NCBI RefSeq assembly: GCF_031769215.1
Contig: NW_026782588.1
Location: forward strand, 372,001 to 436,000
Origin: Ylistrum balloti
Lineage: Eukaryota
Direction of reading: 5' to 3'
DNA length: 64,000 nucleotides
Each line of letters starts with the position of its first letter. The stretch's first letter is position 1. Under the pieces are notes generated by a model that searched no databases, was not told the DNA's origin, and saw nothing but the letters and a program-made list of their open reading frames with translations. Positions 13,175-62,250 of this stretch are shown piece after piece. The position numbers and the translations under genes were made by a program.

Positions 13175-14395
13175 TCAAATGTTATCATTTCTATTAGTGT
13201 TTTCTGTTATGCAATCCTGTGTAAACATAGACACAATGTTTTCTGGAGTCAGACCATGCGAGGTTACCATATGTGGTCCCTTATATACACAGCTTTCTAA
13301 TGGCACAAGAACAGGGTTAAATCCCTGTAGACTCGTCAATGTATAACCAAGCTGTTCAATACATAACGATATATATACATCCTCAAGGTAAAAAAATGGC
13401 ACGTCTTTTGATATAGTATAGACTTTTCTCATTGTAGTCATACTAGTAACGTACCCTGTTCCTGAACAGTATCCTGGGTACACCGACCTCGGGTACTGAC
13501 GAAATGACGCATACCATTTAAATCTGCTATCTCGGACAGGTAACGCAACGTGTTTACAATATCCTCCAACAGAATTCTCAAGTTGTTTTTCATGATTTTT
13601 CACGCTTTCTAACAAATTCCGAACATTGACATATACGTCGTCATCAGTTTTCATCACAAATTTGGCAGAAGAACAAAACAAATTAGCCCACTTAAATCCC
13701 ATTAATGTTTTTAGTGTCAGATTATTGTAGCTGTCGATGAAATCCTCTTGCACGATATCCTTATATTTAGCAAACTCTCGAGTTATATCCTGTTTCAATG
13801 GCTTGTTAGACTGGGAACCCAGCAGGAAGACGTACCTTACGTTTGATGTATTGTTTTTAGAAATGTTTAGCCATGTCCTTCGAATTACCTCTCTTTTGTG
13901 TCGATTACCAGGTGTTGTCGAGATTAAAATAACAACGTCTATGTCGGAAGTTTGTTTCACACTGCATATGTCTTTGTTGACATGAATAAAGTTAAAGTTA
14001 TGCAGGAAACAGTTTGAGCAGTTATCAAGACGGGCGAGAGGGTCGAAGGTAGTTGTTGGCTCGGCACTCGTGCTCGGTGTTGTTGTTGCTGTCAAATTTG
14101 CTGTTAAAGAAGACATCGGTGTTTGTTTTTCTGATGATGACGATGGCGACGGCAACGCTGACGATTCTATCGAAGTTGTTCTTGCGTTGTTAAAATTCAT
14201 GTGACCAATAAGGTTTAACTCGGTTGTATTCCTCATATTGAATAACATCCTAGAGTTATCCCTCAGTCGGGTTTTTGTGCTATGTCTTAAGAGGAGTTCC
14301 GAGTGTTTCTTCTTGTTCGTTCTATTTAACCAAATATACACCAGCACACATGCGAACAATGGTAGTATCATCTTTAGTAGATATCTCTTAGCCAT
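13175..14395 (-). CDS. B3GALT: Beta-1,3-galactosyltransferase-like (GT31), copy 1, 406 aa, most divergent C-terminus
   Basis: Type II TM (ILPLFACVLVYIWL), Ser/Thr-rich stem, and GT31 motifs IRRTW, FVMKTDDDVYVN (DxD), YPGYCSGTGYV and LEDVY. Intact intronless ORF. The family call is firm; the exact orthologue and acceptor specificity are not. Confidence 0.93.
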   Translation of the reverse strand: MAKRYLLKMILPLFACVLVYIWLNRTNKKKHSELLLRHSTKTRLRDNSRMLFNMRNTTELNLIGHMNFNNARTTSIESSALPSPSSSSEKQTPMSSLTANLTATTTPSTSAEPTTTFDPLARLDNCSNCFLHNFNFIHVNKDICSVKQTSDIDVVILISTTPGNRHKREVIRRTWLNISKNNTSNVRYVFLLGSQSNKPLKQDITREFAKYKDIVQEDFIDSYNNLTLKTLMGFKWANLFCSSAKFVMKTDDDVYVNVRNLLESVKNHEKQLENSVGGYCKHVALPVRDSRFKWYASFRQYPRSVYPGYCSGTGYVTSMTTMRKVYTISKDVPFFYLEDVYISLCIEQLGYTLTSLQGFNPVLVPLESCVYKGPHMVTSHGLTPENIVSMFTQDCITENTNRNDNI

Positions 14396-15460
14396 GATGT
14401 GAAGTGAACTTATGATTTATGTTTAAAAGCAGTCAGCTCTAGGTTTTTCCGTCATCTACCTGAATCCGAGCATTGGTATAGAACCTATCCTGTGTTACTC
14501 TATGAATACAAAACGCAATAACGTTATCAATAAATATGTACCTGAAAACACATTTTTCAAATTTTCAACTATCTTAGCCCTATCAAGTCAACTGAAATAT
14601 TCGCAGAAGACAGATTAAACTGATAAGGGGACGTTTCAGGTGTTGACAGCGTTGATCCGTTATCAACCCTGCGATGAAAATAAATTACTTTAGCAAACAC
14701 GTGTTTGTGTGTGTTTGTATGTGAGGTTATATTAGAGACGGTATGTATATTAATGCATGGCATGCACATACATGTTCAAATATATTCCATGTCGTTTTCA
14801 TTATTACAATCATTGCATCTATGTTCAATGTAATCAAAATATCATTTTTTCGATGTAACTTAATGAAAATACACATTAATTTCACCCTGTTTAATAATTC
14901 ATTCAATACCGCAAACATTCTTACTTCTATGCAATGAAATTTCATCACTTTGTCTGTGCGTTTGGAAAATAAGCGCAATGATGAAATAGCACATCTACAA
15001 TGATTGCTATCAACAAGATAATATTTTCTGGAAATACTTTCAGCGGGAAAAGCGCTAAAGAAACTACCACTGAAATATGCATGTTCACATAATAGGTTTG
15101 AAACGTAAACATGCCACATTAGGTGACAAGAAATATTCATGTCTGATGACACAATGTATTTTTCATTTGTTAAATTTTAAAATTTTCAACTATCTTAGCC
15201 CTATCAAGTCATTATCAAGTGGTTAAAGCTAGATGGATATATACATTTGCATCGAGAAATGAAGAGAAAACAATCTGCATAAATGGATATGTCTGATGAA
15301 GAAATTTTATACAATTTCTACTGTATATTACCAGTACTTACAGTAATGGAACCGCAGTACCGAAGTCAAAGCAGCGAATCACAAAGTTGTCATTTCAAAA
15401 TGCTTTGCAACCAAAAAAAATAAGATAAACTCCGGCTATTTGTGGAAGGATCAACTCTAT

Positions 15461-16669
15461 TCAAATGTTATCAATTCTAGTAGTGTTTTCTGTTATGCAA
15501 TCCTGTGTAAACATAGACACCATGTTTTCTGGAGTCAGACCATGCGAGGTTACCATATATGGTCCCTTATATACACAGCTGTCTAATGGCACAAGAACAG
15601 GGTTAAATCCCTGTAGACTCGTCAGTGTATCACTAAGCTGTTCAATACATAACGATATATATACATCCTCAAGGTAAAAAAATGGCACGTCTTTTGATAT
15701 AGTATAGACTTTTCTCATTGTAGTCATACTAGTAACGTACCCTGTTCCTGAACAGTATCCTGGGTACACCGACCTCGGGTACTGACGAAGTGACGCGTAC
15801 CATTTAAATCTGCTATCTCGGACAGGTAACGCAACGTGTTTACAATATCCTCCAACAGAATTCTCAAGTTGTTTTTCATGATTTTTCACGCTTTCTAACA
15901 AATTCCGAACATTGACATATACGTCGTCATCAGTTTTCATCACAAATTTGGCAGAAGAACAAAACAAATTAGCCCACTTAAATCCCATTAATGTTTTTAA
16001 TGTCAGATTATTGTAGCTGTCGATGAAATCCTCTTGCACGATATCCTTATATTTAGCAAACTCTCGAGTTATATCCTGTTTCAATGGCTTGTTAGACTGG
16101 GAACCCAGCAGGAAGACGTACCTTACGTTTGATGTATTGTTTTTAGAAATGTTTAGCCATGTCCTTCGAATTACCTCTCTTTTGTGTCGATTACCAGGTG
16201 TTGTCGAGATTAAAATAACAACGTCTATGTTGGAAGTTTGTTTCACACTGCATATGTCTTTGTTGACATGAATAAAGTTAAAGTTATGTAGGAAACAGTT
16301 TGAACAGTTGTCAAGACGTGCGAGAGGGTCGATGGTAGTTGTTGGCTTGGTGCTCGTGCTCGGTGTTGTTGTTGCTGTCAAAGAAGTCATCGGTGTTCGT
16401 TTTTCTGATAATGACGATGGCGACGGCAACGCTGACGATTCTATCGATGTTGTTCGTGCGTTGTTAAAATTCATGTGACCAATAAGGTTTAACTCGGTTG
16501 TATTCCTCATATTGAATAACATCCTAGAGTTATCCCTCAGTCGGGTTTTTGTGCTATGTCTTAAGAGGAGTTCCGAGTGTTTCTTCTTGTTCGTTCTATT
16601 TAACCAAATATACACCAGCACACATGCGAACAATGGTAGTATCATCTTTAGTAGATATCTCTTAGCCAT
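15461..16669 (-). CDS. B3GALT: Beta-1,3-galactosyltransferase-like (GT31), copy 2, 402 aa
   Basis: Same motifs as copy 1, with a 12-bp shorter stem. Confidence 0.93.
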   Translation of the reverse strand: MAKRYLLKMILPLFACVLVYIWLNRTNKKKHSELLLRHSTKTRLRDNSRMLFNMRNTTELNLIGHMNFNNARTTSIESSALPSPSSLSEKRTPMTSLTATTTPSTSTKPTTTIDPLARLDNCSNCFLHNFNFIHVNKDICSVKQTSNIDVVILISTTPGNRHKREVIRRTWLNISKNNTSNVRYVFLLGSQSNKPLKQDITREFAKYKDIVQEDFIDSYNNLTLKTLMGFKWANLFCSSAKFVMKTDDDVYVNVRNLLESVKNHEKQLENSVGGYCKHVALPVRDSRFKWYASLRQYPRSVYPGYCSGTGYVTSMTTMRKVYTISKDVPFFYLEDVYISLCIEQLSDTLTSLQGFNPVLVPLDSCVYKGPYMVTSHGLTPENMVSMFTQDCITENTTRIDNI

Positions 16670-17734: not shown

Positions 17735-18943
17735 TCAAATGTTATCAATTCTAGTAGTGTTTTCTGTTATGCAATCCTGTGTAAACATAGACACCATGTT
17801 TTCTGGAGTCAGACCATGCGAGGTTACCATATATGGTCCCTTATATACACAGCTGTCTAATGGCACAAGAACAGGGTTAAATCCCTGTAGACTCGTCAGT
17901 GTATCACTAAGCTGTTCAATACATAACGATATATATACATCCTCAAGGTAAAAAAATGGCACGTCTTTTGATATAGTATAGACTTTTCTCATTGTAGTCA
18001 TACTAGTAACGTACCCTGTTCCTGAACAGTATCCTGGGTACACCGACCTCGGGTACTGACGAAGTGACGCGTACCATTTAAATCTGCTATCTCGGACAGG
18101 TAACGCAACGTGTTTACAATATCCTCCAACAGAATTCTCAAGTTGTTTTTCATGATTTTTCACGCTTTCTAACAAATTCCGAACATTGACATATACGTCG
18201 TCATCAGTTTTCATCACAAATTTGGCAGAAGAACAAAACAAATTAGCCCACTTAAATCCCATTAATGTTTTTAATGTCAGATTATTGTAGCTGTCGATGA
18301 AATCCTCTTGCACGATATCCTTATATTTAGCAAACTCTCGAGTTATATCCTGTTTCAATGGCTTGTTAGACTGGGAACCCAGCAGGAAGACGTACCTTAC
18401 GTTTGATGTATTGTTTTTAGAAATGTTTAGCCATGTCCTTCGAATTACCTCTCTTTTGTGTCGATTACCAGGTGTTGTCGAGATTAAAATAACAACGTCT
18501 ATGTTGGAAGTTTGTTTCACACTGCATATGTCTTTGTTGACATGAATAAAGTTAAAGTTATGTAGGAAACAGTTTGAACAGTTGTCAAGACGTGCGAGAG
18601 GGTCGATGGTAGTTGTTGGCTTGGTGCTCGTGCTCGGTGTTGTTGTTGCTGTCAAAGAAGTCATCGGTGTTCGTTTTTCTGATAATGACGATGGCGACGG
18701 CAACGCTGACGATTCTATCGATGTTGTTCGTGCGTTGTTAAAATTCATGTGACCAATAAGGTTTAACTCGGTTGTATTCCTCATATTGAATAACATCCTA
18801 GAGTTATCCCTCAGTCGGGTTTTTGTGCTATGTCTTAAGAGGAGTTCCGAGTGTTTCTTCTTGTTCGTTCTATTTAACCAAATATACACCAGCACACATG
18901 CGAACAATGGTAGTATCATCTTTAGTAGATATCTCTTAGCCAT
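17735..18943 (-). CDS. B3GALT: Beta-1,3-galactosyltransferase-like (GT31), copy 3, 402 aa (protein identical to copy 2)
   Basis: Same GT31 motifs; the ORF-track translation is identical to copy 2. Confidence 0.92.
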   Translation of the reverse strand: MAKRYLLKMILPLFACVLVYIWLNRTNKKKHSELLLRHSTKTRLRDNSRMLFNMRNTTELNLIGHMNFNNARTTSIESSALPSPSSLSEKRTPMTSLTATTTPSTSTKPTTTIDPLARLDNCSNCFLHNFNFIHVNKDICSVKQTSNIDVVILISTTPGNRHKREVIRRTWLNISKNNTSNVRYVFLLGSQSNKPLKQDITREFAKYKDIVQEDFIDSYNNLTLKTLMGFKWANLFCSSAKFVMKTDDDVYVNVRNLLESVKNHEKQLENSVGGYCKHVALPVRDSRFKWYASLRQYPRSVYPGYCSGTGYVTSMTTMRKVYTISKDVPFFYLEDVYISLCIEQLSDTLTSLQGFNPVLVPLDSCVYKGPYMVTSHGLTPENMVSMFTQDCITENTTRIDNI

Positions 18944-20006: not shown

Positions 20007-21215
20007 TCAAATGTTATCAATTCTAGTAGTGTTTTCTGTTATGCAATCCTGTGTAAACATAGACACCATGTTTTCTGGAGTCAGACCATGCGAGGTTACC
20101 ATATATGGTCCCTTATATACACAGCTGTCTAATGGCACAAGAACAGGGTTAAATCCCTGTAGACTCGTCAGTGTATAACTAAGCTGTTCAATACATAACG
20201 ATATATATACATCCTCAAGGTAAAAAAATGGCACGTCTTTTGATATAGTATAGACTTTTCTCATTGTAGTCATACTAGTAACGTACCCTGTTCCTGAACA
20301 GTATCCTGGGTACACCGACCTCGGGTACTGACGAAGTGACGCGTACCATTTAAATCTGCTATCTCGGACAGGTAACGCAACGTGTTTACAATATCCTCCA
20401 ACAGAATTCTCAAGTTGTTTTTCATGATTTTTCACGCTTTCTAACAAATTCCGAACATTGACATATACGTCGTCATCAGTTTTCATCACAAATTTGGCAG
20501 AAGAACAAAACAAATTAGCCCACTTAAATCCCATTAATGTTTTTAATGTCAGATTATTGTAGCTGTCGATGAAATCCTCTTGCACGATATCCTTATATTT
20601 AGCAAACTCTCGAGTTATATCCTGTTTCAATGGCTTGTTAGACTGGGAACCCAGCAGGAAGACGTACCTTACGTTTGATGTATTGTTTTTAGAAATGTTT
20701 AGCCATGTCCTTCGAATTACCTCTCTTTTGTGTCGATTACCAGGTGTTGTCGAGATTAAAATAACAACGTCTATGTTGGAAGTTTGTTTCACACTGCATA
20801 TGTCTTTGTTGACATGAATAAAGTTAAAGTTATGTAGGAAACAGTTTGAACAGTTGTCAAGACGTGCGAGAGGGTCGATGGTAGTTGTTGGCTTGGTGCT
20901 CGTGCTCGGTGTTGTTGTTGCTGTCAAAGAAGTCATCGGTGTTCGTTTTTCTGATAATGACGATGGCGACGGCAACGCTGACGATTCTATCGATGTTGTT
21001 CGTGCGTTGTTAAAATTCATGTGACCAATAAGGTTTAACTCGGTTGTATTCCTCATATTGAATAACATCCTAGAGTTATCCCTCAGTCGGGTTTTTGTGC
21101 TATGTCTTAAGAGGAGTTCCGAGTGTTTCTTCTTGTTCGTTCTATTTAACCAAATATACACCAGCACACATGCGAACAATGGTAGTATCATCTTTAGTAG
21201 ATATCTCTTAGCCAT
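20007..21215 (-). CDS. B3GALT: Beta-1,3-galactosyltransferase-like (GT31), copy 4, 402 aa
   Basis: Same GT31 motifs; differs from copies 2/3 by QLSYT versus QLSDT. Confidence 0.93.
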   Translation of the reverse strand: MAKRYLLKMILPLFACVLVYIWLNRTNKKKHSELLLRHSTKTRLRDNSRMLFNMRNTTELNLIGHMNFNNARTTSIESSALPSPSSLSEKRTPMTSLTATTTPSTSTKPTTTIDPLARLDNCSNCFLHNFNFIHVNKDICSVKQTSNIDVVILISTTPGNRHKREVIRRTWLNISKNNTSNVRYVFLLGSQSNKPLKQDITREFAKYKDIVQEDFIDSYNNLTLKTLMGFKWANLFCSSAKFVMKTDDDVYVNVRNLLESVKNHEKQLENSVGGYCKHVALPVRDSRFKWYASLRQYPRSVYPGYCSGTGYVTSMTTMRKVYTISKDVPFFYLEDVYISLCIEQLSYTLTSLQGFNPVLVPLDSCVYKGPYMVTSHGLTPENMVSMFTQDCITENTTRIDNI

Positions 21216-22808: not shown

Positions 22809-24029
22809 TCAAATGTTATCAATTCTAGTAGTGTTTTCTGTTATGCAATCCTGTGTAAACATAGACACCATGTTTTCTGGAGTCAGACCATGCGAGGTTA
22901 CCATATGTGGTCCCTTATATACACAGCTGTCTAATGGCACAAGAACAGGGTTAAATCCCTGTAGACTCGTCAGTGTATAACCAAGCTGTTCAATACATAA
23001 CGATATATATACATCCTCAAGGTAAAAAAATGGCACGTCTTTTGATATAGTATAGACTTTTCTCATTGTAGTCATACTAGTAACGTACCCTGTTCCTGAA
23101 CAGTATCCTGGGTACACCGACCTCGGGTACTGACGAAATGACGCATACCATTTAAATCTGCTATCTCGGACAGGTAACGCAACGTGTTTACAATATCCTC
23201 CAACAGAATTCTCAAGTTGTTTTTCATGATTTTTCACGCTTTCTAACAAATTCCGAACATTGACATATACGTCGTCATCAGTTTTCATCACAAATTTGGC
23301 AGAAGAACAAAACAAATTAGCCCACTTAAATCCCATTAATGTTTTTAATGTCAGATTATTGTAGCTGTCGATGAAATCCTCTTGCACGATATCCTTATAT
23401 TTAGCAAACTCTCGAGTTATATCCTGTTTCAATGGCTTGTTAGACTGGGAACCCAGCAGGAAGACGTACCTTACGTTTGATGTATTGTTTTTAGAAATGT
23501 TTAGCCATGTCCTTCGAATTACCTCTCTTTTGTGTCGATTACCAGGTGTTGTCGAGATTAAAATAACAACGTCTATGTCGGAAGTTTGTTTCACACTGCA
23601 TATGTCTTTGTTGACATGAATAAAGTTAAAGTTATGAAGGAAACAGTTTGAGCAGTTATCAAGACGGGCGAGAGGGTCGAAGGTAGTTGTTGGCTCGGCA
23701 CTCGTGCTCGGTGTTGTTGTTGCTGTCAAATTTGCTGTTAAAGAAGACATCGGTGTTTGTTTTTCTGATGATGACGATGGCGACGGCAACGCTGACGATT
23801 CTATCGATGTTGTTCGTGCGTTGTTAAAATTCATGTGACCAATAAGGTTTAACTCGGTTGTATTCCTCATATTGAATAACATCCTAGAGTTATCCCTCAG
23901 TCGGGTTTTTGTGCTATGTCTTAAGAGGAGTTCCGAGTGTTTCTTCTTGTTCGTTCTATTTAACCAAATATACACCAGCACACATGCGAACAATGGTAGT
24001 ATCATCTTTAGTAGATATCTCTTAGCCAT
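22809..24029 (-). CDS. B3GALT: Beta-1,3-galactosyltransferase-like (GT31), copy 5, 406 aa
   Basis: Same GT31 motifs, long stem. Confidence 0.93.
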   Translation of the reverse strand: MAKRYLLKMILPLFACVLVYIWLNRTNKKKHSELLLRHSTKTRLRDNSRMLFNMRNTTELNLIGHMNFNNARTTSIESSALPSPSSSSEKQTPMSSLTANLTATTTPSTSAEPTTTFDPLARLDNCSNCFLHNFNFIHVNKDICSVKQTSDIDVVILISTTPGNRHKREVIRRTWLNISKNNTSNVRYVFLLGSQSNKPLKQDITREFAKYKDIVQEDFIDSYNNLTLKTLMGFKWANLFCSSAKFVMKTDDDVYVNVRNLLESVKNHEKQLENSVGGYCKHVALPVRDSRFKWYASFRQYPRSVYPGYCSGTGYVTSMTTMRKVYTISKDVPFFYLEDVYISLCIEQLGYTLTSLQGFNPVLVPLDSCVYKGPHMVTSHGLTPENMVSMFTQDCITENTTRIDNI

Positions 24030-25625: not shown

Positions 25626-26846
25626 TCAAATGTTATCAATTCTAGTAGTGTTTTCTGTTATGCAATCCTGTGTAAACATAGACACCATGTTTTCTGGAGT
25701 CAGACCATGCGAGGTTACCATATATGGTCCCTTATATACACAGCTGTCTAATGGCACAAGAACAGGGTTAAATCCCTGTAGACTCGTCAGTGTATAACTA
25801 AGCTGTTCAATACATAACGATATATATACATCCTCAAGGTAAAAAAATGGCACGTCTTTTGATATAGTATAGACTTTTCTCATTGTAGTCATACTAGTAA
25901 CGTACCCTGTTCCTGAACAGTATCCTGGGTACACCGACCTCGGGTACTGACGAAATGACGCATACCATTTAAATCTGCTATCTCGGACAGGTAACGCAAC
26001 GTGTTTACAATATCCTCCAACAGAATTCTCAAGTTGTTTTTCATGATTTTTCACGCTTTCTAACAAATTCCGAACATTGACATATACGTCGTCATCAGTT
26101 TTCATCACAAATTTGGCAGAAGAACAAAACAAATTAGCCCACTTAAATCCCATTAATGTTTTTAGTGTCAGATTATTGTAGCTGTCGATGAAATCCTCTT
26201 GCACGATATCCTTATATTTAGCAAACTCTCGAGTTATATCCTGTTTCAATGGCTTGTTAGACTGGGAACCCAGCAGGAAGACGTACCTTACGTTTGATGT
26301 ATTGTTTTTAGAAATGTTTAGCCATGTCCTTCGAATTACCTCTCTTTTGTGTCGATTACCAGGTGTTGTCGAGATTAAAATAACAACGTCTATGTCGGAA
26401 GTTTGTTTCACACTGCATATGTCTTTGTTGACATGAATAAAGTTAAAGTTATGAAGGAAACAGTTTGAGCAGTTATCAAGACGGGCGAGAGGGTCGAAGG
26501 TAGTTGTTGGCTCGGCACTCGTGCTCGGTGTTGTTGTTGCTGTCAAATTTGCTGTTAAAGAAGACATCGGTGTTTGTTTTTCTGATGATGACGATGGCGA
26601 CGGCAACGCTGACGATTCTATCGATGTTGTTCGTGCGTTGTTAAAATTCATGTGACCAATAAGGTTTAACTCGGTTGTATTCCTCATATTGAATAACATC
26701 CTAGAGTTATCCCTCAGTCGGGTTTTTGTGCTATGTCTTAAGAGGAGTTCCGAGTGTTTCTTCTTGTTCGTTCTATTTAACCAAATATACACCAGCACAC
26801 ATGCGAACAATGGTAGTATCATCTTTAGTAGATATCTCTTAGCCAT
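25626..26846 (-). CDS. B3GALT: Beta-1,3-galactosyltransferase-like (GT31), copy 6, 406 aa (5'-most copy)
   Basis: Same GT31 motifs. Long stem, with C-terminal residues shared with copy 4. Confidence 0.93.
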   Translation of the reverse strand: MAKRYLLKMILPLFACVLVYIWLNRTNKKKHSELLLRHSTKTRLRDNSRMLFNMRNTTELNLIGHMNFNNARTTSIESSALPSPSSSSEKQTPMSSLTANLTATTTPSTSAEPTTTFDPLARLDNCSNCFLHNFNFIHVNKDICSVKQTSDIDVVILISTTPGNRHKREVIRRTWLNISKNNTSNVRYVFLLGSQSNKPLKQDITREFAKYKDIVQEDFIDSYNNLTLKTLMGFKWANLFCSSAKFVMKTDDDVYVNVRNLLESVKNHEKQLENSVGGYCKHVALPVRDSRFKWYASFRQYPRSVYPGYCSGTGYVTSMTTMRKVYTISKDVPFFYLEDVYISLCIEQLSYTLTSLQGFNPVLVPLDSCVYKGPYMVTSHGLTPENMVSMFTQDCITENTTRIDNI

Positions 26847-26992
26847 GATGTGAAGTGAACTTATGATTTATGTTTAAAAGCAGTCAGCTCTAGGTTTTTC
26901 CGTCATCTACATGAATCCGAGCATTGGTATAGAACCTATCCTGTGTTACTCTATGAATACAAAGCGCAATAACGTTATCAGTAAATATGTAC

Positions 26993-27405
26993 ACACGTTT
27001 TTTAATCAAGTTTCTTTATCTAATCAAGTGAAATATGAACAGGAAAAAAAATCACTGATAAGGGGACATGTCAGGTTGTGGGTGTTCATCCTCTATTTTT
27101 ATTGCAATTTGTTTGGGTGTGATTGCATGTGAATTCATTGCAAGTATATACATGTTCATAATGCACATGTTTTCAATGTCATCAATATATAATATTTTAC
27201 AAAGTAACTAAGTTAGAATACACATTAATTTCCCACTGTTAAATATTCCATTTATTACCGCAAACCTCTTTATTATGTGTAATTAAATTTCAACACTTCG
27301 TCAGTGCATTTGACAAATTAGCTCAATGATGAAATAACGCATTCACAATGCTATCAACACAAATATATTTTTTATCAAAATTTTCAGCGGGAAAATCGCT
27401 AATTA
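26993..27405. other. Diverged paralog of the array spacer (upstream region of copy 6)
   Basis: Colinear, diverged match to 14545-15060, with shared blocks CTGATAAGGGGAC, ATACACATTAATTTC, ATACCGCAAAC/TTACCGCAAAC, CAATGATGAAATA and TTTCAGCGGGAAAA. Confidence 0.8.
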
Positions 27406-31066: not shown

Positions 31067-31984
31067 ATGGCGTTGATGCTACCACAGCGGCTACAACTGG
31101 AGCGCTTGAGGTAACAACTGAGGCAGAACCAACGGCAACGGTAAACTGTTATTGCAGCTATAGTTGTATTGGAACACCAGCGGGTCCGTCGGGAAGACGA
31201 ACGGTTTGGGTAAAACCCTGGCGTACCACCCTAGGACACTATGATACGTTAATGCAGGAGCTCATGAGGGAATCTCGGGAGATTTCATGTCCTACCCTCA
31301 TTGCTAAGGAGCCATAGACGGCAAACACATCGCCATCAAGAAGCCACGACATTCCGGTACCGCATATGGTAACTAAGGGTTTTTTCTCCATTGTGCTCTT
31401 GGGGCTTGTCGACGCAGACTATAAGTTTTTGTGGGTGAACGTTGGTGCGAAATAATCCATGTCTGATGCTGGTGTCTTCAATGAGTCAACCCTGGAACCT
31501 GCTCTTCGACAGAAAACCCTTGGCCTTCCACCCCCAGAGCGTCTACCCAATGATAACGATATTTCACCATATTTTATTGTTGGAGATGACGCCTTTCCTC
31601 TGCGTACATACCTCATGAAACCATACTCCCACCATTACCTTGAGCACGACGAAAGAGTCTTCAATTATCGTACATCCCGTGGCAGGAGGGTGGTCGAAAA
31701 CCCATTTGGGATACCTGCCATGCGCTTCCGATGTCTGTTGACGCATTTGCAGACCACACCCGAGAACGCTATTTTGATTACGAAAGCATGCGTCGTTCTA
31801 CATCAGATAATGTGACAGAGATTCCCAAACCTCCAGAATGCATACCTAGACCAAGAAGCAATCGACGGGCAGATAACACCAGGTGCATTGAGAGACCAAG
31901 CGATGATGCAAGAAATGGAAATCGGACGTGCTCCCCGTGAAACCCGAGAAGGAAAGCTCCTCCGTACAGCACTCAAGTACTACA
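31067..31984 (+). pseudogene. Harbinger (HARBI1-like DDE) transposase remnant with stops, frameshifts and a large internal deletion
   Basis: Recognisable segments RRTVWVKPW..LGHYDTLMQEL, GFFSIVLLGLVDADYKFLWVNVG, SDAGVF, FIVGDDAFPLRTYLMKPY, ERVFNYRTSRGRRVVENPFGI and KACVVLH. Confidence 0.9.
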
Positions 31985-32085
31985 ATTGCTTTGTCTTCTC
32001 TAAAAGCATCCCGGTCTTCAGTCTGTCTCGGCTCTGTCACAACAACCTTTTTCGTTTTCTTTGCTTCGGATCCTTTAGGTGGCAT
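31985..32085 (-). pseudogene. Probable N-terminal stub of the Harbinger second (Myb/SANT-type) ORF, convergent with the transposase
   Basis: Lys-rich start MPPKGSEAKKTKKVVVTEPRQ. Position and orientation match the two-ORF Harbinger layout, but the Myb domain itself is absent. Confidence 0.5.
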
Positions 32086-33152: not shown

Positions 33153-34800
33153 CAGAAGTAGATGAAGTAAATATTTTAACGGTCAGATCCAATCTTGTTT
33201 ACTTGAGGCTGCAGAGAGGTCGATTAAAAGAAGTTCATTTAAGAAATATTTGAAACCATACTGGAACAAAGAATTATCACTTCTCCATAGTGAGAGGGTT
33301 TCCGAAAGGTCAACTTGAACCGCATCGGGTCGACCAAGAGGCGAAAGTAATTTGCTTAAAAGTTACAAGTCTATCAAAACCATATTTAGATGATTTCTTC
33401 GTCGCGCATTTGATGTTTATTTGAAGGAACAATTCGACCAAGAATTCTTATGGAAACTTTTTACAGAATCTTTCTCGAAACGCTGGGTATTGCCAAACAG
33501 AGATGACGTATAATGGTATTACTATACATGAACCAGGGCAAATTGTGGAAGCCCGAGGTAAACACTTCAGTACATTTTTTGATAATGATAACTCTTTTGC
33601 GTCATTTGACGACAATTTTGCTCAAAATGTATTTCTCGAGATTAGTGAAATCCAAAATGGTATTCATATAGAAAAAGATACGTTTTTATCTGATATTTTT
33701 AGTGTTGATGAAATATGACGTGTTTGTAAGAAACTTAAAAGCAACAAAGCTGTTGGTTGTGATAATTTGGTTTATGAACATATCAGATATGGAGGAGATA
33801 ACTTACTCACTTACGTAACTAAATTATTCAATTTAATTATTAAGTATGAACAAATACCAAAAGCTTGGAATACGGGTACAAGTTTTACTTTGTATAACGG
33901 TAATGGGAAACCCAGAAATGACCCCAACAGTTATAGAGGTATAACTTTGATACCAGTTTTCTTCAAAATTTTCGAGTCAGTTCTTCTGGCTCAAAGAATG
34001 GATTCCTTGTTACACTCTAATACGTTTCCTATTAGACAACAATCTACATACCAGAAGAACATATGTAGTATGTGTACTTCTTTTAATCTTCAAGAATGTG
34101 ACAGATATAATTTAGTGTACAATTCTAATTCATGTGTTGCTTTTCTGGACAGCAATAAAGCCTTTGATACCGTTTGGCAGAACAGGTTGCTTCTTAAGTT
34201 GTATAACATTGGGTTTAGAGGTAAAATCTGGACTATATTAAAGAACATGTACACTGGCTTCGTTAGCCATGTTACTTTTAAAGGTCATCTGTCATCTCCT
34301 GTAATATGAAACGGGAAACCTTACAAGGTGGATCATTATCTGCTAAAATGTATTTGGTCTTCATCAATGACTTATTGAACGATGTAGAATCATTATGGTA
34401 CAATTGTGGTTAATTCTTAATTTAACATCCCAACACAGGCTGATGACATATGCTTAGTGTATGGGATTACAGCATATGGTTTCAGTTTGCAAAAAATATA
34501 ATTATAAATGGAAATTTTCATTTTCTGTTAATAAAAGTAAAATTGTTGTACTTACCAATAGCAGGAAACAAGCTTTGCCGAAAAATGTGTTTTATATGGA
34601 AAAGCATTGCCAGTTGTTGAAAACATTACTCATGTTGGAGTTTTACTGAATTTCAAGTTTTGTTCATATGACAAGACTGATATCGCTTGTAAAAGGACAA
34701 GTATACTAACCTTGTCAATTGATACTTGATACTTTACGGTAACAAATTCGCTACTTAATTTGCGTCAATCAATTGTACATATGGACTTTATGAATCTTCA
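33153..34800 (+). mobile_element. Decayed non-LTR retrotransposon (LINE) ORF2 / reverse transcriptase fragment
   Basis: KSNKAVGCDNLVYEHI, DPNSYRGITLIPVFFKIFESV, AFLDSNKAFDTVW, LQGGSLSAKMYLVFINDL and QADDICL (YADD-equivalent), broken by stops and frameshifts. Clade not assignable by eye. Confidence 0.88.
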
Positions 34801-37837: not shown

Positions 37838-38445
37838 TTGAACTTGATCAGAATGATTAAATCAGTATATCGCGTTGAACTTGATCACAATGATTAAATC
37901 GGTATATCGCGTTGAACTTGATCACAATGATTAAATCAGTATATCGCGTTGAACTTGATCAGAATGATTAAATCAGTATATCGCGTTGAACTTGATCAGA
38001 ATGATTAAATCAGTATATCGCGTTGAACTTGGTCATAATGGTTAAATCAGTATATCGCGTTGAACTTGATCACAATGGTTAAATCAGTATATCGCGTTGG
38101 ACTTGATCACAATGATTAAATCATTATATCGCGTTGAACTTGATCACAATGATTAAATCAGTATATCGCTTTGAACTTGATCACAATGATTAAATCAGTA
38201 TATCGCGTTGGACTTGATCACAATGATTAAATCATTATATCGCGTTGAACTTGATCACAATGATTAAATCAGTATATCGCTTTGAACTTGATCACAATGA
38301 TTAAATCAGTATATCGCGTTGGACTTGATCAGAATGATTAAATCATTATATCGCGTTGAACTTGATCACAATGATTAAATCAGTATATCGCGTTGAACTT
38401 GATCAGAATGATTAAATCAGTATATCGCGTTGAACTTGATCAGAT
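37838..38445. repeat. 37-bp minisatellite (GTTGAACTTGATCACAATGATTAAATCAGTATATCGC), ~16 copies
   Basis: Direct periodicity. Confidence 0.95.
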
Positions 38446-40639: not shown

Positions 40640-41680
40640 CAGATGACACTAAATTGTTCAGAAGCATAACAGAAAATACCGATGTGAATATGCTTCAAGA
40701 TGATCTGGATCGCCTTTCAGCTTGGAGTGAAAAATGATAATTGAAATTTCAACCTCAAAAATGTATTTTTTGCGCATTGGCAGGCAAAGTGGAGACAGAA
40801 AATATTATTTAAACAACGAAGAATTACAGGAAGTCTACCAAGAAAAAGATATAGGGGTAACTATAGACAATTCTTTATCATTCGATGAACACATAAGTAC
40901 ACAGGTCAAAAAAAGCAAACTCTATGTTTGCACTCATAAGGAGAACGTTTCAATTTCTCAATGAACACAACTTCCCATTATTGTACAAAATAATAGTTAG
41001 GGTTCATCTGGAACATTCTATTACTGTATGGCATCCATATAAAGTCAAACATATAGATAAGATCGAGGCAGTGAAACGGAGAGCAACAAAACAATTATCA
41101 GGATTTAAGGAACTGACTTATTCGGAAAGACTGAAACGTCTAAAATTACTAACATTGGCTTTCAGGAGGATTCGTGGGGATATGAATGAAGTCTTCAAAA
41201 TTACGAACTATTTTTGTGATAGTAACGCTGCTGGTTTCCTTAAATTTTGGATCAACAATGTTAAAATTCAGAGGACAAGGGGTCACTCCAAAAAACTTTA
41301 CATGCAGCACTGTAAACTTGACATCAGGAAACATTATTTTGTGTTGTGTGTGGTCAAAATATGGAATAATCTCCGGAGTATATTGTATCGCCACCAACAG
41401 TTAACTCTTTCAAAAATAGATTAAATGAACACTGGGCAAATCAAGAACTGGTATATAATTATGAATCAGAAATTCTGTAGTTCCTGGATCTGACGTCTCA
41501 AATGACAATAATTATAAACATTATCATTGTATCACTGAGACCCGTATAGAGGATCGTAACGATCCTGCACTGGTAATAAACTAAACTAAACTAAATTAAA
41601 TTAAACTGAACTAAACTATTAACTAACTAACTTACTAACTAACTTACTAACTAACTTACTAACTTACTTACTTACTACTA
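40640..41680 (+). mobile_element. 5'-truncated CR1 LINE: RT C-terminus, 3' UTR and (TAAAC/TAAC)n microsatellite tail
   Basis: LQDDLDRLSAWS, EKDIGVTIDNSLSFDEHI, VRVHLEHSITVWHPY, IEAVKRRATK, YSERLKRLKLLTL..RRIRGDM, RTRGHSKKL and VVKIWNNL. Tail repeats at ~41576-41680. Confidence 0.9.
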
Positions 41681-43856
41681 TTCTCCAAAGGATATGAAAA
41701 TTTCTACAATATCACAAATGTAGATACTCTGGGTCCTCACATTGATGAAAACTGTTATAAGCATACGATAGCAAAGAGACGTAGAAATGGTTCCCGCGCA
41801 CCGGTAGTCCATCTTAAATAGCAACTGTTAAAAAATGATTAAAAAAAATCAAACTTCTATTATCAAAAATATAGGTAATATAAATAACGGAATAATTCAA
41901 CCATTGCACATTTATATTGTACCAAAAACCGAAAAAAAATACTTCTATTTATACTATCCAAAGTTATAACTTACAATGGGAGAGTGATTTAATTCAGTGC
42001 TGAACTATTAAAGCGGAATTTCACACTCTCAATAGTGATATGAACAAATGATAATTACTGACACATTTGCATATCTTTTAGTTCATTTTTGTATGTCTGG
42101 TTTGTGGTTATTTTTATCTATTGAAAAATCATGCATTTTATAAAGTTGTTTAATCTAGTATTTCTTTTTTATTTTCACGGGTTTTTAGATTAATTTTCCG
42201 GAATACTCCACATCCAAATCTAAATTTAGTATTTACATCAAGCGCACCAGACGCTTTGATCAACGTCAGGAGGAAGTATTCTGACAAAAAGAACGTAATG
42301 TTTTTTTCGTCTGAAAATGTGTAGTAAGAATTTCAAAGGTATGTAGTTCTGTTTTGATTACATGTTAGATGATCAATTAAGCTCTTATTGTTTGCACAAG
42401 TATTTACAAGTCGAATAAATAACAGCTAGAAAGATGACAGCTTATAAAAGGAATAAGCACAGTTACACTTGAGTGAACTGCAGCCATGTCAACAAGTCCA
42501 ATCAATGGTGCCGGCGACCCAAAACAACAGAACAAAATGTCTAAATTATATGAAGTGGAACGTAGTTTAATTGAAAACAACCGATGTTTTCAAAGTGGAG
42601 AGGCCTTATATTACAGTGTATAGAGGATTAATGAATCATCATACAACTGCAAAAATATAATTCATTTGCGTGTAGGAAACTACTGGAAATAGGTCCAGTG
42701 CTTCTGGCCTATAGAGCCTACATGTGTACATAAATCATGTTACGATAGTACAGTTACTATGGTGGCAACCGTTACATCAAGTTTCTCAGTAGCCAGAACT
42801 TAATGCGACTTTTAATAGTATATTGCAAAAGTTAATGTTGAAAATCGCATCCCTGCAAAAACATTAATTTTAAAATTAATCTAATTGTTATATTAAACAC
42901 CAAATCATTAACCATTAATACAAAGGAACCTTGACACTTTTTAGACAAGTATTTCAAATTCAGTTGAATCAAGCACATTTTAAAATTAAAGTATTTAATA
43001 CTGATGACAGAATAATAGAATACAATGCTTTCATCAATAACTTTGTTCAGAAGTTATTGAAAATCTATAAAAATCCTCTAATTTGACATGTTTGCAGTAT
43101 TGTATCTTTTCAGAAATCTTGAAATTTAAATTTTTTGTTTTGAAATTGAAATTTAGAACAATTTCCACAAAAGAAATGCTTTTGAATAACTTGTCTAATT
43201 GTTTATGTAAATTGAAAATAACATATTTAAGCATTATATAAAATTGGGCCCTCCCTTGACCCTCTCTTATTTTGAGGATTCAAAGCCTTTTTTCAATTCT
43301 GATTCACAAATTAATTACATTATGATTTTCAAGAAATTGCAATAGTTTTAATCTTCTTTAGTTTGCTATACAAACTAGTTGAGTAATTTATCATTTTTGT
43401 TTTAATGGCAGTATAAATAAGATATTTCTACCGTAGAGTCAATAAAAGTTATTAATGGTGGGCACGATGGACCCCCATGGATCCTCTTTCTTCTTTGTCT
43501 TCTGAGCAACTATACTTTGATATATGTATGTCTAGATAAATGTTTATATTGTATTGACGTTAGTGATAATATTGGATGATGCATGTGGACTCATACAAAA
43601 TAATGACAGTTTGTTTAATTACATTGAAGATGGCTTAATATAAGATTTATAATCTTGTTGCCAGATCCATTTTCAATTTTATAATTTGTGTATGTGTATG
43701 TTGTTTAATGAAAATATGAAAATAAAATATTGTTTAAACCAATTACAATGAAATGTTGACAAGAGATCTAAAGATTTCTGTTTTGTTTACTTTTTAATTT
43801 CATTTGGCTTCTGATTTTCTTCTTCACAGTAAGAATAGCATCTTAACAAAGCAAGG

Positions 43857-43866
43857 ATGAGACGAG
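43857..43866 (+). CDS. Predicted first coding segment (ATG AGA CGA G) of the alpha-1,2-fucosyltransferase, within a 37-nt exon at 43830-43866
   Basis: Acceptor TTCTTCTTCACAG at 43817-43829 and donor G|GTAATC at 43867. The phase-1 junction joins exactly to the phase required at the 46166 acceptor, giving MRRG-LLTSTKCWILGLLAVV. Confidence 0.72.
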
Positions 43867-46165
43867 GTAATCATAAATGCTGTATTGGAAATGTGTGTAG
43901 TTGGCAGACTTTCTCTGCATATGGTATATCATACTGTTACTGTTGATTTTTGGGACTCAAATATTGAAGTCCGGGCTTCTTGCTTTTTCTGTGAGACTTG
44001 AATCAGATTTTGAGAACCACTTTATCTCTTTGTATCTGAACTCATCAAAATTTTTAAAGTTGTGCTTTGGACCCACCAGAAAATATTGTATAATAATTAC
44101 TGATTTACTAACTAGTATCATATATCTTTTGAGCTTGCCCATTGATATATCCATCTTACAGTTGCTAGCACTACACACATTTATTGGGTGTTGGAGAAAA
44201 TTCAGTTTCTTACACATAGCTTTTTGAATTTAATCACCTCTAATGATGATGCCAATTTCTGAAGCTGAAAGATTTATTTGTATGTAAATTTTTTCACTGG
44301 AATAGCCCTTATGTGTGAAAATTTAATTTGCATGATTTTTAACTACAATGTTTATCAAACAATATCCCCAGACATGTGTATCTACATTGAGACTAAATTT
44401 CATATTTATTTAATCCTGTCAACAGTGAAATTAAAAGATTGAGTCCTGATGAAATTTAGATAAAAGTCTGCTGTCATAGAAAATTACAAACAAATCTTAC
44501 TTCATTGACCTTTTCACTTCTTGTGATGAGCACCACTGATTTTTTGGTGTAGGTACAGTTAATGTGTTGGTGCCAGAACTTATAACAGGATACATGTTTA
44601 GTAAATTTACATCTATCGGTATGATCATTATGCACACAGTGTCAACATAAAACTTCTGACACAAAGTCAGGGATAAATTTATTTAAGAACAAATGATTTA
44701 ACATCCGTAAGTAATTCTATGGCACATCAGTAGATATATATCATTAGATGGGCTTATTACTAGACATGGGCTTATTGTTGGATATTATTTATATATTATA
44801 TTATTTAGTATTCAGTGTTTATACTTTGTATTAGATTATAAGTGATAATAGTTCATAAAATATTTTGTTCTTGAACTTGAAAATGCTGATTTGGAGAATC
44901 TAAATTGTACAAGATTTCACTGTTACTTAAGGTAAATCCAGGTGTAACATGTGTTCTGCTTTAGATGCTTTACATTATGGAGGATGACCAATACTTCAAA
45001 GTTACCTAGTTGTATAGACTTTTAAAGCCATACAATTCAAGCCTTCAATATGATCAAAAGTCTAGATATGTGGCAGGTGTTGCTCATGTCTATATATCTC
45101 ATACAAAGGAATCTTTATCAAGTATCCTATAGAGACTTTTAAAATCATATTGAAGACTTGAATTATATTACTTTAAAGTCTATATAAAGAGATTATACTG
45201 AAGTATCAGTCCGTAGACAGCTTGATTACGAGTGTGAGTGTATTGTGTGTAATTTTTAACTTGGAAATATGGTGAAATGTCCCTGGTATTTCAGCTTTGT
45301 ATCATGTAGAGTTTCATCAAAGAGTTGGACCAGAATGTCTGAGTTTTATTGATCATTGTATTAATTCAGTTTTATTTGAATGCTAATAATTTTCACTAAC
45401 TCTTTACACTCATGAATTTATGAAAAAGTTCGGTAATTTATAAATCTTTTCAACAGCTCATGAAATTTGATTGATTACAGGAAAGACAACAATTTCTTGG
45501 TGTGGTTTGATTTCTTGTGGAATTAATTTTATTTTTACTTTCTGTTGTATTTAGATACATGTTAATATATATGTATATATAATACATTCATACTTTACAT
45601 ATTTGCAACAACATTTGCATGCATTTTAGTAACGTATTGAATCATTGTTTTAATAGCATGTGTATTTATTTTATCTCACAAAGTTGCATGTTTGTAGTGG
45701 CAGTGTATTATATACATATATCAGCCATATTTGATGTGATACAAGTACTGCAGTGATTATGATGAAGCATTCCATGACCTGCTTTCAAGGTCACACTGGT
45801 CAAATAAGTTAAAACCCTTAAAGGACTTCTTCTCAATAATCAAAAGGCCAAGGCTGCTGATATTGGGTCTATAGCATGATGGAATGAAGGGCTACCAACT
45901 TTATTAAAATGATTGCATTTGACCTTGACTTACTTCCCAAGGTCACATGATTTTACTATTTTCAACAAGCAGTATGTCCAGAGTAATCACATTTGTGTAA
46001 TGCATGTATAAAGGATATATTTTCAAGTTTGCAGAAAATGTCTTTATGAACAAACCAATGTCTTTTATGTAAGATGTAGTGTAGTTGACCGATTTATTTC
46101 AGGCCTATTTGGCCTCTATTTATGCTAAATACAAAATAAATCTTTATGAATTTGTATCATTACAG

Positions 46166-47346
46166 GACTTTTAACCAGCACAAAGTGCTGGATTCTTGGG
46201 CTCCTGGCAGTAGTCACTGTCATCATCATTCACCTGTCAAACATCGGCAGCAAAACTGACCACAGTAGTGGAATATCTGTCATCGACACCTATGGCTCCA
46301 CACATGGTATCATGTCAAAGTTCTTCTCTGGTGAAAGAAATTTTGAGAAGAAAAGCAGTCATGACATACCCCCTCTCAAAAGGGGTGAAATGGAATCCAA
46401 ATTAACGAATACCTATACACGCAAAGAAAATGTGTTGATTGAAGAACAGCTCATGCCTAAAGTTAGTCAGAATATAACCAAAAAGGTTGGTTTTACTTTA
46501 GAAACAAAACGTGCCCCACCAAAACATTATATTACCATTCATTTCAAAGGAAGACTGGGAAATCTGCTTTTCCAGTATGCATCCTTATTCGGAATAGCTA
46601 ATAAAAACAACCTGATCCCAGTGATTTCTGAAAATAGTGAGTTGCGGAGAATTTTCAAAATAACATCCCTGTCCACAGAGAGTAACAATGTGAGATATGG
46701 CCGAGTTTTCAAAGAGAAAATTGGATGTGCATTTGAACCAGAAGCAATGAAACTCGGATCAGAAACAAATACAAAGCTGGATGGTTACTTTCAAAGTTTC
46801 AAGTACTTTCAAGAGCATGATGCACTACTGCGTCAACAATTCCAATTTAAAGATGACATACAAAAAAGAGCAGCTTCTGTATTTTCTGAACTTGTTGACC
46901 AAAAATCTAAAAACAAAAATGGTCCTGTGACATATATTGCAGTCCATGTGCGCAGGGGTGATTTTATTCATAATAAAGGTTTTAGTAGGTATGGTTATGT
47001 GTCCCCAGGCCCCGAATATCTAGAAAAAGGATTGAACTTGTTTAGAGCTAATTTCACTAACTGCATATTTGTGATTGCCTCAGATGACTTAAACTGGTGT
47101 AAAGAAAACATGCACGGAAATGATTTGGTTTTCATGAACCCTGGTAACACCCGTGAACTTGACTTCGCAGTGATGACACAATGTAGTCATATGCTTATGA
47201 CTGTCGGCAGCTTTGGCTGGTGGACAGCATGGCTGATCAACGGCAAAACTGTTTACTACACAGGCTATCCCCGTCCTGGATCTGAGCTTGCAAAACAGAT
47301 TGTATTAGAGGACTATAGACCTCCTCATTGGATTGGTCTGTCGTAA
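46166..47346 (+). CDS. FUT1/2-like: Galactoside alpha-1,2-fucosyltransferase (GT11), main coding exon; predicted full protein ~396 aa
   Basis: GT11 motifs GRLGNLLFQYA, DGYFQSFKYF, AVHVRRGDF, ASDDLNWCKEN and GSFGWWTAWL. The frame is open upstream of the ORF-track ATG (46312) back to acceptor TACAG|46166 and encodes the type II TM CWILGLLAVVTVIIIHL. Confidence 0.92.
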
Positions 47347-62243: not shown

Positions 62244-62250
62244 GACTTAC

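What the first reader, a model, noticed from the sequence alone, without database searches (positions are those of the whole stretch)
13175..47346. Candidate histo-blood-group (H type 1) glycan locus: amplified beta-1,3-GalT array head-to-head with an alpha-1,2-FucT
Seen: six GT31 genes (minus strand) and one GT11 gene (plus strand) are divergently oriented. Only repeats and TE remnants were recognised in the ~17 kb between copy 6 and the FUT start exon. Established: in mammals, H type 1 (Fuc-a1,2-Gal-b1,3-GlcNAc) is made sequentially by a beta-1,3-GalT (e.g. B3GALT5) and FUT2. HBGA-like glycans in bivalve digestive tissue are implicated in norovirus binding. Inference: this may be a physically linked two-step glycan pathway in which copy number of the first enzyme tunes a surface or mucus epitope relevant to microbes, viruses or self-recognition. 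Caveats: GT31 also contains GlcNAc- and GalNAc-transferases, and both families are often expanded, so the adjacency could be chance.
Basis: partly seen in the sequence, partly recalled or inferred. Interest (0 to 1): 0.8.

Follow-up and report, generated by a model that had tools for sequence, protein, structure and literature searches.

The report
Scallop galactosyltransferase gene array beside fucosyltransferase
A saucer scallop carries six nearly identical, freshly duplicated copies of a B3GALT5-like sugar-adding enzyme gene about 15-17 kb from an alpha-1,2-fucosyltransferase gene, but nothing yet shows that the two work as one blood-group-like glycan pathway, so this looks like an ordinary lineage-specific gene amplification.

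Summary
The window is Ylistrum balloti JAUZWB010001017.1:372001-436000. It holds six intact minus-strand GT31 (PF01762) genes of 402-406 aa, 96-99% identical, in whole-unit tandem repeats. A plus-strand GT11 (PF01531) FUT gene has start exons 15.5 and 17.0 kb from copy 6, with only TE debris and minisatellites between.

The GT31 copies are B3GALT1/2/5-type: 160 bits to human B3GALT5 against 94 to B3GNT2. Fourteen of 19 B3GALT5 functional residues are identical in all six copies.

The array belongs to a pectinid-only clade. Pecten maximus has two linked copies, also near-identical to each other, head-to-head with its FUT orthologue about 37 kb away, with a DAGK-domain gene in between. No GT31 lies within 10 kb of the FUT orthologue in Mizuhopecten, an oyster or an abalone.

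Functional coupling is not shown. The distance rules out a shared promoter. Two small runs that hold the FUT exon gave no GT31 contig. The one oyster alpha-1,2-FucT tested on type 1 rejected it, though it is probably a paralogue. Oyster N-glycans do carry type-1 H/A epitopes whose enzymes are unknown, so the idea stays plausible but untested.

Verdict: a new member of a known kind, of modest interest. The scan had already noted this array (s1-262850).

The parts
11516..11779 (-). Old diverged remnant resembling the 3' flank of a GT31 unit (77-79% identical). It abuts the next feature with no CDS between them, forming an 'empty unit' junction.
11784..12579 (-). Terminal partial unit of the array: spacer / 5'-flank sequence, 94-96% identical to the other spacers.
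13175..14395 (-). GT31 copy 1, 406 aa (type A), intact. It has an N-terminal signal anchor, a Ser/Thr/Pro-rich stem and a PF01762 catalytic domain.
15461..16669 (-). GT31 copy 2, 402 aa (type B), intact. Its CDS is identical to copy 3.
17735..18943 (-). GT31 copy 3, 402 aa (type B), intact.
20007..21215 (-). GT31 copy 4, 402 aa (type B), intact.
22809..24029 (-). GT31 copy 5, 406 aa (type A), intact. It is flanked on both sides by the long (~1.6 kb) spacers.
25626..26846 (-). GT31 copy 6, 406 aa (type A), intact. The array ends at about 26992.
27172..27402 (.). Diverged (78% identical) spacer-like remnant just outside the array.
31459..31815 (+). Fragment of a DDE_Tnp_4 (Harbinger-type) transposase.
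33767..34309 (+). Reverse-transcriptase (RVT_1) fragment.
42317..42338 (+). FUT isoform X1 first coding exon (MCSKNFK + 1 nt, donor gt at 42339).
43857..43866 (+). FUT isoform X2 first coding exon (MRR + 1 nt, donor gt).
46166..47346 (+). FUT main coding exon (acceptor AG at 46164-46165). It encodes the TM anchor, the PF01531 domain and the HVRRGD motif, and is 100% identical to XP_060081107/8.
52346..56978 (-). DUF4665 gene exons. This is the conserved tail-to-tail neighbour of FUT in Pecten, Mizuhopecten and Saccostrea.

Best explanation
This is a very recent tandem amplification, specific to the Ylistrum lineage, of a Golgi type II beta-1,3-glycosyltransferase gene. It arose by whole-unit unequal crossing-over. 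The enzyme belongs to the B3GALT1/2/5 (BGRb1) subcluster and most likely transfers Gal from UDP-Gal in beta-1,3 linkage to a terminal HexNAc. All six copies are intact, and each carries at least 1 kb of its own upstream spacer, so dosage probably scales with copy number. The gene belongs to a fast-evolving clade found only in pectinids. That clade has been under long-term purifying selection and has been duplicated or homogenised independently in Ylistrum and Pecten. Its position head-to-head with the conserved FUT(GT11)-DUF4665 gene pair is inherited scallop synteny. It is not a demonstrated co-regulated pathway unit. Both enzymes could contribute to bivalve type-1 H/A-like glycans, but that part is inference only. 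Shown here: gene structure, family and subfamily, conserved catalytic residues, duplication pattern, selection and synteny. Inferred: donor and acceptor specificity, expression, dosage effect and any link to fucosylation.
For: All six ORFs are intact, match PF01762 and are 96-99% identical. Spacers are as similar as the coding sequence (98.5-99.6%), so whole units were duplicated. Within the array dS is 0-0.039. Against Pecten dS is 1.3-1.4 with dN/dS 0.12-0.18. The two Pecten copies differ by dS 0.025. In the tree the array plus the Pecten A/B genes form a 100/100 clade with species-specific subclades and no 1:1 orthologue outside Pectinidae. In PDB searches B3GALT5 scores 160 bits, B3GNT2 94 and B3GALT6 34. 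Fourteen of 19 B3GALT5 functional residues are identical in all copies, including DxD, E-D, the Trp lid, the acetamido-binding Ser and the Mn-binding His. A signal anchor lies at residues 5-23 and the stem is 61% Ser/Thr/Pro. In Pecten the order is GT31x2, then a DAGK-domain gene, then FUT, then DUF4665, in the same orientation as here. Independent DNA runs hold the unit. The BGRb1 context comes from PMC8022947.
Against: Enzyme activity was not tested, and B3GALNT1 in the same subcluster uses UDP-GalNAc (PMC8022947). Glu188, which contacts the acceptor in human B3GALT5, is Ala here. Expression of the array was not shown. The public annotation starts three copies at Met54, which removes the membrane anchor. 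The copy number rests on one assembly, and contig depth cannot serve as a copy number. Linkage conserved in Pecten is also what a functional cluster would predict.
Confidence: 0.65

Rival explanations
1. One reading: the array and FUT form a functionally coupled, physically linked two-step H type 1 pathway. The GT31 makes Gal-beta1,3-GlcNAc and the GT11 adds alpha1,2-Fuc. GT31 copy number tunes the level of the epitope.
For: The GT31 is B3GALT5-like and its acceptor-binding residues are conserved. Head-to-head linkage is also present in Pecten maximus. Oyster N-glycan antennae are mainly type 1 and carry A, ALe-b and H type 1 epitopes, and the enzymes responsible are unidentified (PMC10301044). 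The two characterised oyster FUTs are 318 and 350 aa and are probably paralogues of this 396-400 aa gene (PMC10217650, PMC11522050).
Against: The start codons are 15.5-17 kb apart with TE debris between them. A DAGK-domain gene intervenes in Pecten. There is no GT31 within 10 kb of the FUT orthologue in Mizuhopecten, oyster or abalone, and no orthologue of the array clade outside scallops, whereas FUT-DUF4665 is conserved. Runs X1 and X3 hold 95-97% of the FUT exon but gave no GT31 contig. CgFUT2 has no activity on type 1 disaccharide (PMC11522050). Scallop synteny is expected to be conserved anyway. Several other 'glyco-module' adjacencies were flagged in this genome, so there is a look-elsewhere effect.
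Confidence: 0.15
2. The GT31 copies have a different specificity and are unrelated to H type 1. They might use UDP-GalNAc or UDP-GlcNAc as donor, or act on a glycolipid, O-glycan or galactan acceptor.
For: The BGRb1 subcluster contains B3GALNT1, where the donor switched to UDP-GalNAc (PMC8022947). The clade sits on a long stem of 0.94 substitutions per site. Three changes relative to human B3GALT5 are Glu188 to Ala, Phe213 to Tyr and DSD to DDD. Human B3GALT5 is itself promiscuous, using GalNAc, GlcNAc and Man acceptors.
Against: The residues that hydrogen-bond the donor Gal in B3GALT5 (Tyr128, Lys154, Asp156, Glu242) are all identical. B3GALT5 is by far the best solved match.
Confidence: 0.15
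3. The array is partly an assembly artefact, or the copies are transcriptionally silent young duplicates on the way to becoming pseudogenes.
For: Summed contig word depth in the unit is only about twice that of the unique flank in two DNA runs. No GT31 contig appeared in the two small runs. Pecten copy A is split by a frameshift.
Against: The copies carry distinct substitutions, a 12-bp indel and two spacer lengths, so they are not simple collapsed or duplicated haplotigs. All six ORFs are intact. Long-term dN/dS is 0.12-0.18. The tool itself states that depth is not a copy number.
Confidence: 0.07

Closest known systems
Human beta-1,3-galactosyltransferase 5 (B3GALT5; PDB 8zwp; GT31 subcluster BGRb1 with B3GALT1/2/8 and B3GALNT1)
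   Same: Both have a PF01762 GT-A catalytic domain, type II topology and a single coding exon. Fourteen of 19 donor, metal and acceptor residues are identical: Asp126, Tyr128, Lys134, Lys154, Asp156, Asp158, Lys185, Lys197, Trp198, Tyr210, Ser215, Glu242, Asp243 and His285. The phmmer score is 160 bits (PMC11969544).
   Different: The scallop protein has a ~100-residue mucin-like stem. Its DxD motif is DDD rather than DSD. Glu188 is Ala, Phe213 is Tyr, Thr64 is Ser and Gln69 is Asn. It belongs to a pectinid-only, long-branched clade that is not a 1:1 orthologue of any vertebrate gene. Activity is untested.
Vertebrate FUT1/FUT2 and oyster CgFUT1/CgFUT2 (GT11 alpha-1,2-fucosyltransferases)
   Same: It has the PF01531 domain over its full length, the HVRRGD GDP-fucose motif and an N-terminal membrane anchor.
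   Different: At 396-400 aa it is longer than CgFUT1 (318 aa) and CgFUT2 (350 aa), so it is probably a different paralogue. Its oyster orthologue, identified by the DUF4665 neighbour, is uncharacterised. No solved structure matches it by sequence. Acceptor preference is unknown, and CgFUT2 rejects type 1 (PMC11522050).
Lineage-specific tandem glycosyltransferase arrays homogenised by unequal crossing-over or gene conversion (birth-and-death / concerted evolution)
   Same: Whole units are 97-99% identical. Paralogues within a species are closer than orthologues in both Ylistrum and Pecten. One Pecten copy is broken. Diverged unit remnants lie at both array edges.
   Different: Nothing unusual for the class. 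The only particular feature is its conserved position near a GT11 gene.

Membership tests
GT31 (Pfam PF01762 Galactosyl_T) | Domain match above the Pfam gathering score | tested here: met
   All six copies score 172-173 bits against a cut-off of 23.
GT31 (Pfam PF01762 Galactosyl_T) | DxD metal/donor motif and (E/D)D catalytic motif V | tested here: met
   KTDDD at residues 249-253 and ED at 338-339 are invariant in the six copies.
GT31 (Pfam PF01762 Galactosyl_T) | Type II Golgi topology with an N-terminal signal anchor | tested here: met
   The best 19-residue Kyte-Doolittle window scores 2.12 at residues 5-23, and it is the only hydrophobic segment.
B3GALT1/2/5 subcluster (BGRb1) rather than B3GNT or B3GALT6 | Closer in sequence to B3GALT5 than to B3GNT2 or B3GALT6 | tested here: met
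   Scores are 160 bits against 94 and 34. Public names are 'B3GALT1-like' or 'B3GALT5-like'. No tree with the characterised vertebrate or fly enzymes could be built.
B3GALT1/2/5 subcluster (BGRb1) rather than B3GNT or B3GALT6 | B3GALT5 residues that contact the donor Gal and the acceptor HexNAc | tested here: met
   Fourteen of 19 are identical, four are conservative changes and Glu188 is Ala.
B3GALT1/2/5 subcluster (BGRb1) rather than B3GNT or B3GALT6 | Transfers Gal from UDP-Gal in beta-1,3 linkage to GlcNAc or GalNAc | not testable with these tools
   This needs a recombinant enzyme assay.
GT11 alpha-1,2-fucosyltransferase | PF01531 domain above the gathering score, plus the HxRRxD GDP-fucose motif | tested here: met
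   The score is 147.7 bits against a cut-off of 23.9, covering profile positions 4-297 of 298. HVRRGD is at residue 268.
GT11 alpha-1,2-fucosyltransferase | Fucosylates type 1 (Gal-beta1,3-GlcNAc) acceptors | not testable with these tools
   CgFUT2, the one mollusc enzyme tested on type 1, does not use it (PMC11522050). That enzyme is probably a paralogue.
Co-regulated two-step pathway gene cluster | Shared or bidirectional regulatory region | tested here: not met
   The start codons are 15.5-17.0 kb apart, with TE fragments and minisatellites between them.
Co-regulated two-step pathway gene cluster | Linkage conserved across related species | tested here: inconclusive
   It is present in Pecten maximus at about 37 kb, with a DAGK-domain gene between. 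No GT31 lies within 10 kb of FUT in Mizuhopecten, Saccostrea or Haliotis. The array clade is absent outside scallops.
Co-regulated two-step pathway gene cluster | Co-expression of the two genes | tested here: inconclusive
   Runs X1 and X3 hold 95-97% of the FUT exon but gave no contig on 24001-30000. The kind of run is only guessed, and a filter can drop contigs.

The most novel reading that the evidence does not exclude
The pectinid GT31 array and the conserved FUT next to DUF4665 are the still-unidentified enzymes that build type-1 H/A histo-blood-group-like antennae in bivalves. Their linkage has been retained in scallops, and rapid copy-number turnover of the first step varies the amount of epitope available to lectins, parasites or noroviruses.
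Probability: 0.1. Interest if true: 0.6.

Novelty: new member of a known kind. Interest (0 to 1): 0.3.

Why it matters
Bivalve digestive and haemocyte glycans carry type-1 H/A-like epitopes. These epitopes bind the animals' own galectins and human noroviruses. The beta-1,3-GalT and the type-1-acting alpha-1,2-FucT that build them have not been identified, and the oyster FUTs characterised so far make H type 2. This locus offers concrete candidates for assay: an intact B3GALT5-like gene in six copies, and the uncharacterised FUT that is conserved beside DUF4665 from scallops to oysters. On present evidence, though, it is an ordinary recent tandem amplification in a gene family that expands lineage by lineage in molluscs, and the adjacency to FUT is explained by inherited synteny.

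Tried and rejected
1. I looked for DAGK exons in the window, because a DAGK-domain gene sits between GT31 and FUT in Pecten. tblastx found none.
2. Contig word depth cannot serve as a copy number. The unit-to-flank ratio is about 2, but depth does not differ between segments present three times and six times in the array, and the tool warns against this use.
3. Look-ups of FUT isoforms P0123 and P0122 failed because only the longest isoform is indexed. I solved this through the cluster members.
4. A PDB sequence search for the FUT gave no hit.
5. Rfam gave no hit on 9-58 kb.
6. The 163-aa ORFs in the long spacers and the other intergenic ORFs have no Pfam family, apart from the TE fragments.
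7. The literature search found no paper on this locus, on Y. balloti glycans or on scallop N-glycomes.
9. I rejected the idea that the type A and type B units are 'ancient paralogs'. They differ by dS of 0.039 or less, against 1.3-1.4 to Pecten.
10. I considered structure prediction unnecessary given the 160-bit match to B3GALT5.


Full report
**Identity of the window.** The plus-strand ORF is 100% identical to Ylistrum balloti 'galactoside alpha-(1,2)-fucosyltransferase 2-like' isoforms X1 and X2 (XP_060081107 and XP_060081108) on contig JAUZWB010001017.1, which is 662,765 bp long. Aligning locus L004 fixes the window at contig positions 372001-436000. The window has no N runs.

**Observation.** Six minus-strand ORFs of 402-406 aa and one plus-strand ORF of 344 aa lie at the stated coordinates.
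- All six ORFs match PF01762 Galactosyl_T (172-173 bits), and the seventh matches PF01531 Glyco_transf_11 over the whole profile.
- The GT31 proteins are 96-99% identical.
- The repeat is a whole-unit repeat. Self-BLAST gives 97-99% identity over units of about 2.27 kb (copies 1-4) and about 2.81 kb (copies 4-6). The spacers are 98.5-99.6% identical, as similar as the coding sequence.
- There are two unit types. Type A is 406 aa (copies 1, 5, 6). Type B is 402 aa (copies 2, 3, 4) and has a 12-bp deletion in the stem.
- At the left edge (11779/11784), an old 78%-identical 3'-flank remnant abuts a 95%-identical 5'-flank with no CDS between them. A 78%-identical spacer remnant lies just outside the right edge.
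- The public annotation calls exactly six genes here and nothing else between window positions 10007 and 31215.

**The FUT gene.** Its main exon is 46166-47346, with the acceptor AG at 46164-46165. The first 7 or 3 residues come from alternative mini-exons at 42317-42338 (X1) and 43857-43866 (X2). These lie 15.5 and 17.0 kb from the copy 6 ATG. The protein has an N-terminal anchor and the HVRRGD motif. Between the array and FUT I found only a DDE_Tnp_4 fragment, an RVT_1 fragment, two minisatellites and no Rfam family.

**What the GT31 enzyme is.**
- Among solved structures, the best match by far is human B3GALT5 (8zwp, 160 bits). B3GNT2 scores 94 bits and B3GALT6 scores 34.
- I used the residue list from the B3GALT5 structure paper (PMC11969544) and the HMMER alignment (chain index + 30 gives the residue number, checked on KTDSD and eight other landmarks).
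- Fourteen of 19 functional residues are identical in all six copies. These include the DxD aspartates, the Glu-Asp catalytic pair, the Lys197/Trp198 lid, Ser215 (which binds the acceptor acetamide) and the Mn-binding His285.
- Four residues are conservative changes (T64S, Q69N, S157D, F213Y). One is changed (E188A).
- The full ORF has a signal anchor at residues 5-23 and a stem that is 61% Ser/Thr/Pro.
- Petit et al. (PMC8022947) place B3GALT1/2/5/8 with B3GALNT1 in subcluster BGRb1. They propose that its invertebrate members make the type 1 disaccharide. B3GALNT1 shows, however, that the donor can change within this cluster.
- A beta-1,3-GalT acting on a terminal HexNAc is therefore the most likely activity, but it is inferred.

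**Evolution.**
- Within the array dS is 0-0.039, and copies 2 and 3 are identical.
- Against the Pecten maximus genes dS is 1.3-1.4 with dN/dS 0.12-0.18.
- The two Pecten tandem copies differ from each other by dS 0.025.
- In an IQ-TREE analysis of 61 sequences, the array plus the two Pecten genes form a 100/100 clade on a long stem (0.94). Each species forms its own subclade, and there is no 1:1 orthologue in oysters, mussels, clams or gastropods.
- Pecten copy A is split by a frameshift in its stem, whereas copy B is intact.
- This is the classic pattern of a multi-copy locus that is re-duplicated or homogenised in each lineage while the protein stays under purifying selection.
The empty-unit junction noted in s1-262961 is real.

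**Synteny.**
- In P. maximus chromosome LR736848.1, the FUT orthologue (71% identity) spans 26,677,167-26,697,904 on the minus strand. The two GT31 genes start at 26,734,875 on the plus strand. This is the same head-to-head orientation as in the window, about 37 kb apart.
- A DAGK_cat gene lies upstream of FUT in Pecten, between FUT and the GT31 genes. Mizuhopecten also has a DAGK_cat gene upstream of its FUT. Exons of this gene are absent from the window.
- The tail-to-tail FUT-DUF4665 pair is conserved in Ylistrum, Pecten, Mizuhopecten and the oyster Saccostrea echinata.
- No GT31 sequence occurs within 10 kb of the FUT orthologue in Mizuhopecten, Saccostrea or Haliotis.
- The best GT31 hits of Saccostrea, Ostrea and Gigantopelta lie on contigs of different length from those carrying their FUT genes.
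- Linkage therefore holds in two of the three scallops examined and is absent in the oyster and abalone. This is what ordinary conserved synteny would give.

**Expression.** Only Logan contigs were available.
- Three small runs of one study (about 50 M letters each) hold 95-97% of the FUT exon plus its 3' flank. For a genome-scale DNA sample that would be very unlikely, so I infer that these runs are cDNA-derived. Their kind is only guessed by the tool.
- Two of them gave no contig anywhere on 24001-30000, although any of the six copies would have been laid there.
- Two large DNA runs from different studies cover that stretch fully, and their contigs break at 25017 and about 26955, which are the unit borders.
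- This is weak evidence against co-expression in those samples. It supports a repeated structure in other individuals. It is not a copy-number measurement.

**Literature context.**
- Oyster N-glycan antennae are mostly type 1 and carry A and ALe-b epitopes. Ostrea edulis also carries H type 1 (PMC10301044). Beta-1,3-Gal is also reported in C. virginica (PMC6935376).
- CgFUT1 makes H type 2 (PMC10217650).
- CgFUT2 fucosylates type 2 and galactans but has no activity on type 1 or type 3 disaccharides (PMC11522050). By length both are probably paralogues of the gene here.
- One oyster transcriptome study lists a B3GALT1 and a FUT2-like gene among norovirus-responsive genes, without any linkage claim (PMC9431538).
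- I found no paper that describes this locus.

**Chance.** Earlier notes on this same genome flag a GT10+GT11 island and a B3GALT next to galectins. I did not check those notes, but they suggest that glycan-gene neighbourhoods are common here, so a look-elsewhere effect applies. I did not compute a formal probability, because genome-wide counts of GT31 and GT11 genes were not available.

**Verdict.** The 'linked two-step H type 1 pathway with tunable first step' remains an untested hypothesis, and several observations weigh mildly against it. The best-supported reading is a recent, ordinary tandem amplification in a rapidly turning-over pectinid GT31 lineage that sits near FUT by descent.

Noticed in passing
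window 13175-14395, 22809-24029, 25626-26846: The public gene models for copies 1, 5 and 6 are 353 aa and start at Met54. The upstream 53 codons, including the only membrane anchor, are intact and identical to those of copies 2-4, which are modelled at 402 aa. The start codons are probably mis-called.
   Followed up: partly
window 112-9333: A 9.2-kb satellite has a 42-bp unit (about 224 copies, 84% matches), 47% GC and a strong GC skew of +0.2. It lies about 2.4 kb from the left edge of the GT31 array (11784).
   Followed up: no
window 57980-62244 and 62624-63623: There is a 27-bp satellite (about 159 copies, GC skew +0.5) and an adjacent 37/111-bp satellite. The 564-aa ORF at 58634-60328 lies wholly inside the 27-bp repeat, has no Pfam family and is an artefact of the repeat.
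   Followed up: partly
window 11516-11860: This is an 'empty unit' junction. A 78%-identical 3'-flank remnant directly abuts a 95%-identical 5'-flank with no coding sequence between. A similar 78% spacer remnant lies at 27172-27402. Both suggest older rounds of duplication and deletion around the young array.
   Followed up: partly
L001:9652-10936 (Pecten maximus LR736848.1): Pecten copy A is split by a frameshift in its Ser/Thr-rich stem. The TM+stem ORF at 9652-10083 overlaps the catalytic ORF at 10001-10936 in another frame. This may be a pseudogene or a sequencing error. Copy B (12980-14257) is intact.
   Followed up: partly
window 52346-56978; L002, L003, L005: A small DUF4665 gene (96-107 aa) lies tail-to-tail with this FUT in Ylistrum, Pecten, Mizuhopecten and the oyster Saccostrea. 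This microsynteny is much older than the GT31-FUT linkage.
   Followed up: partly
L002:1-4181 and L003:1-4210 versus window 27000-46000: A DAGK_cat-domain gene lies directly upstream of FUT in Pecten and Mizuhopecten but is absent from the corresponding interval in Ylistrum.
   Followed up: partly
window 21545-22036 and 24359-24850: A 163-aa TTG-start ORF occurs in each long spacer. Part of it lies in the ~530-bp segment that distinguishes long from short spacers. It has no Pfam family and is probably not a gene.
   Followed up: partly
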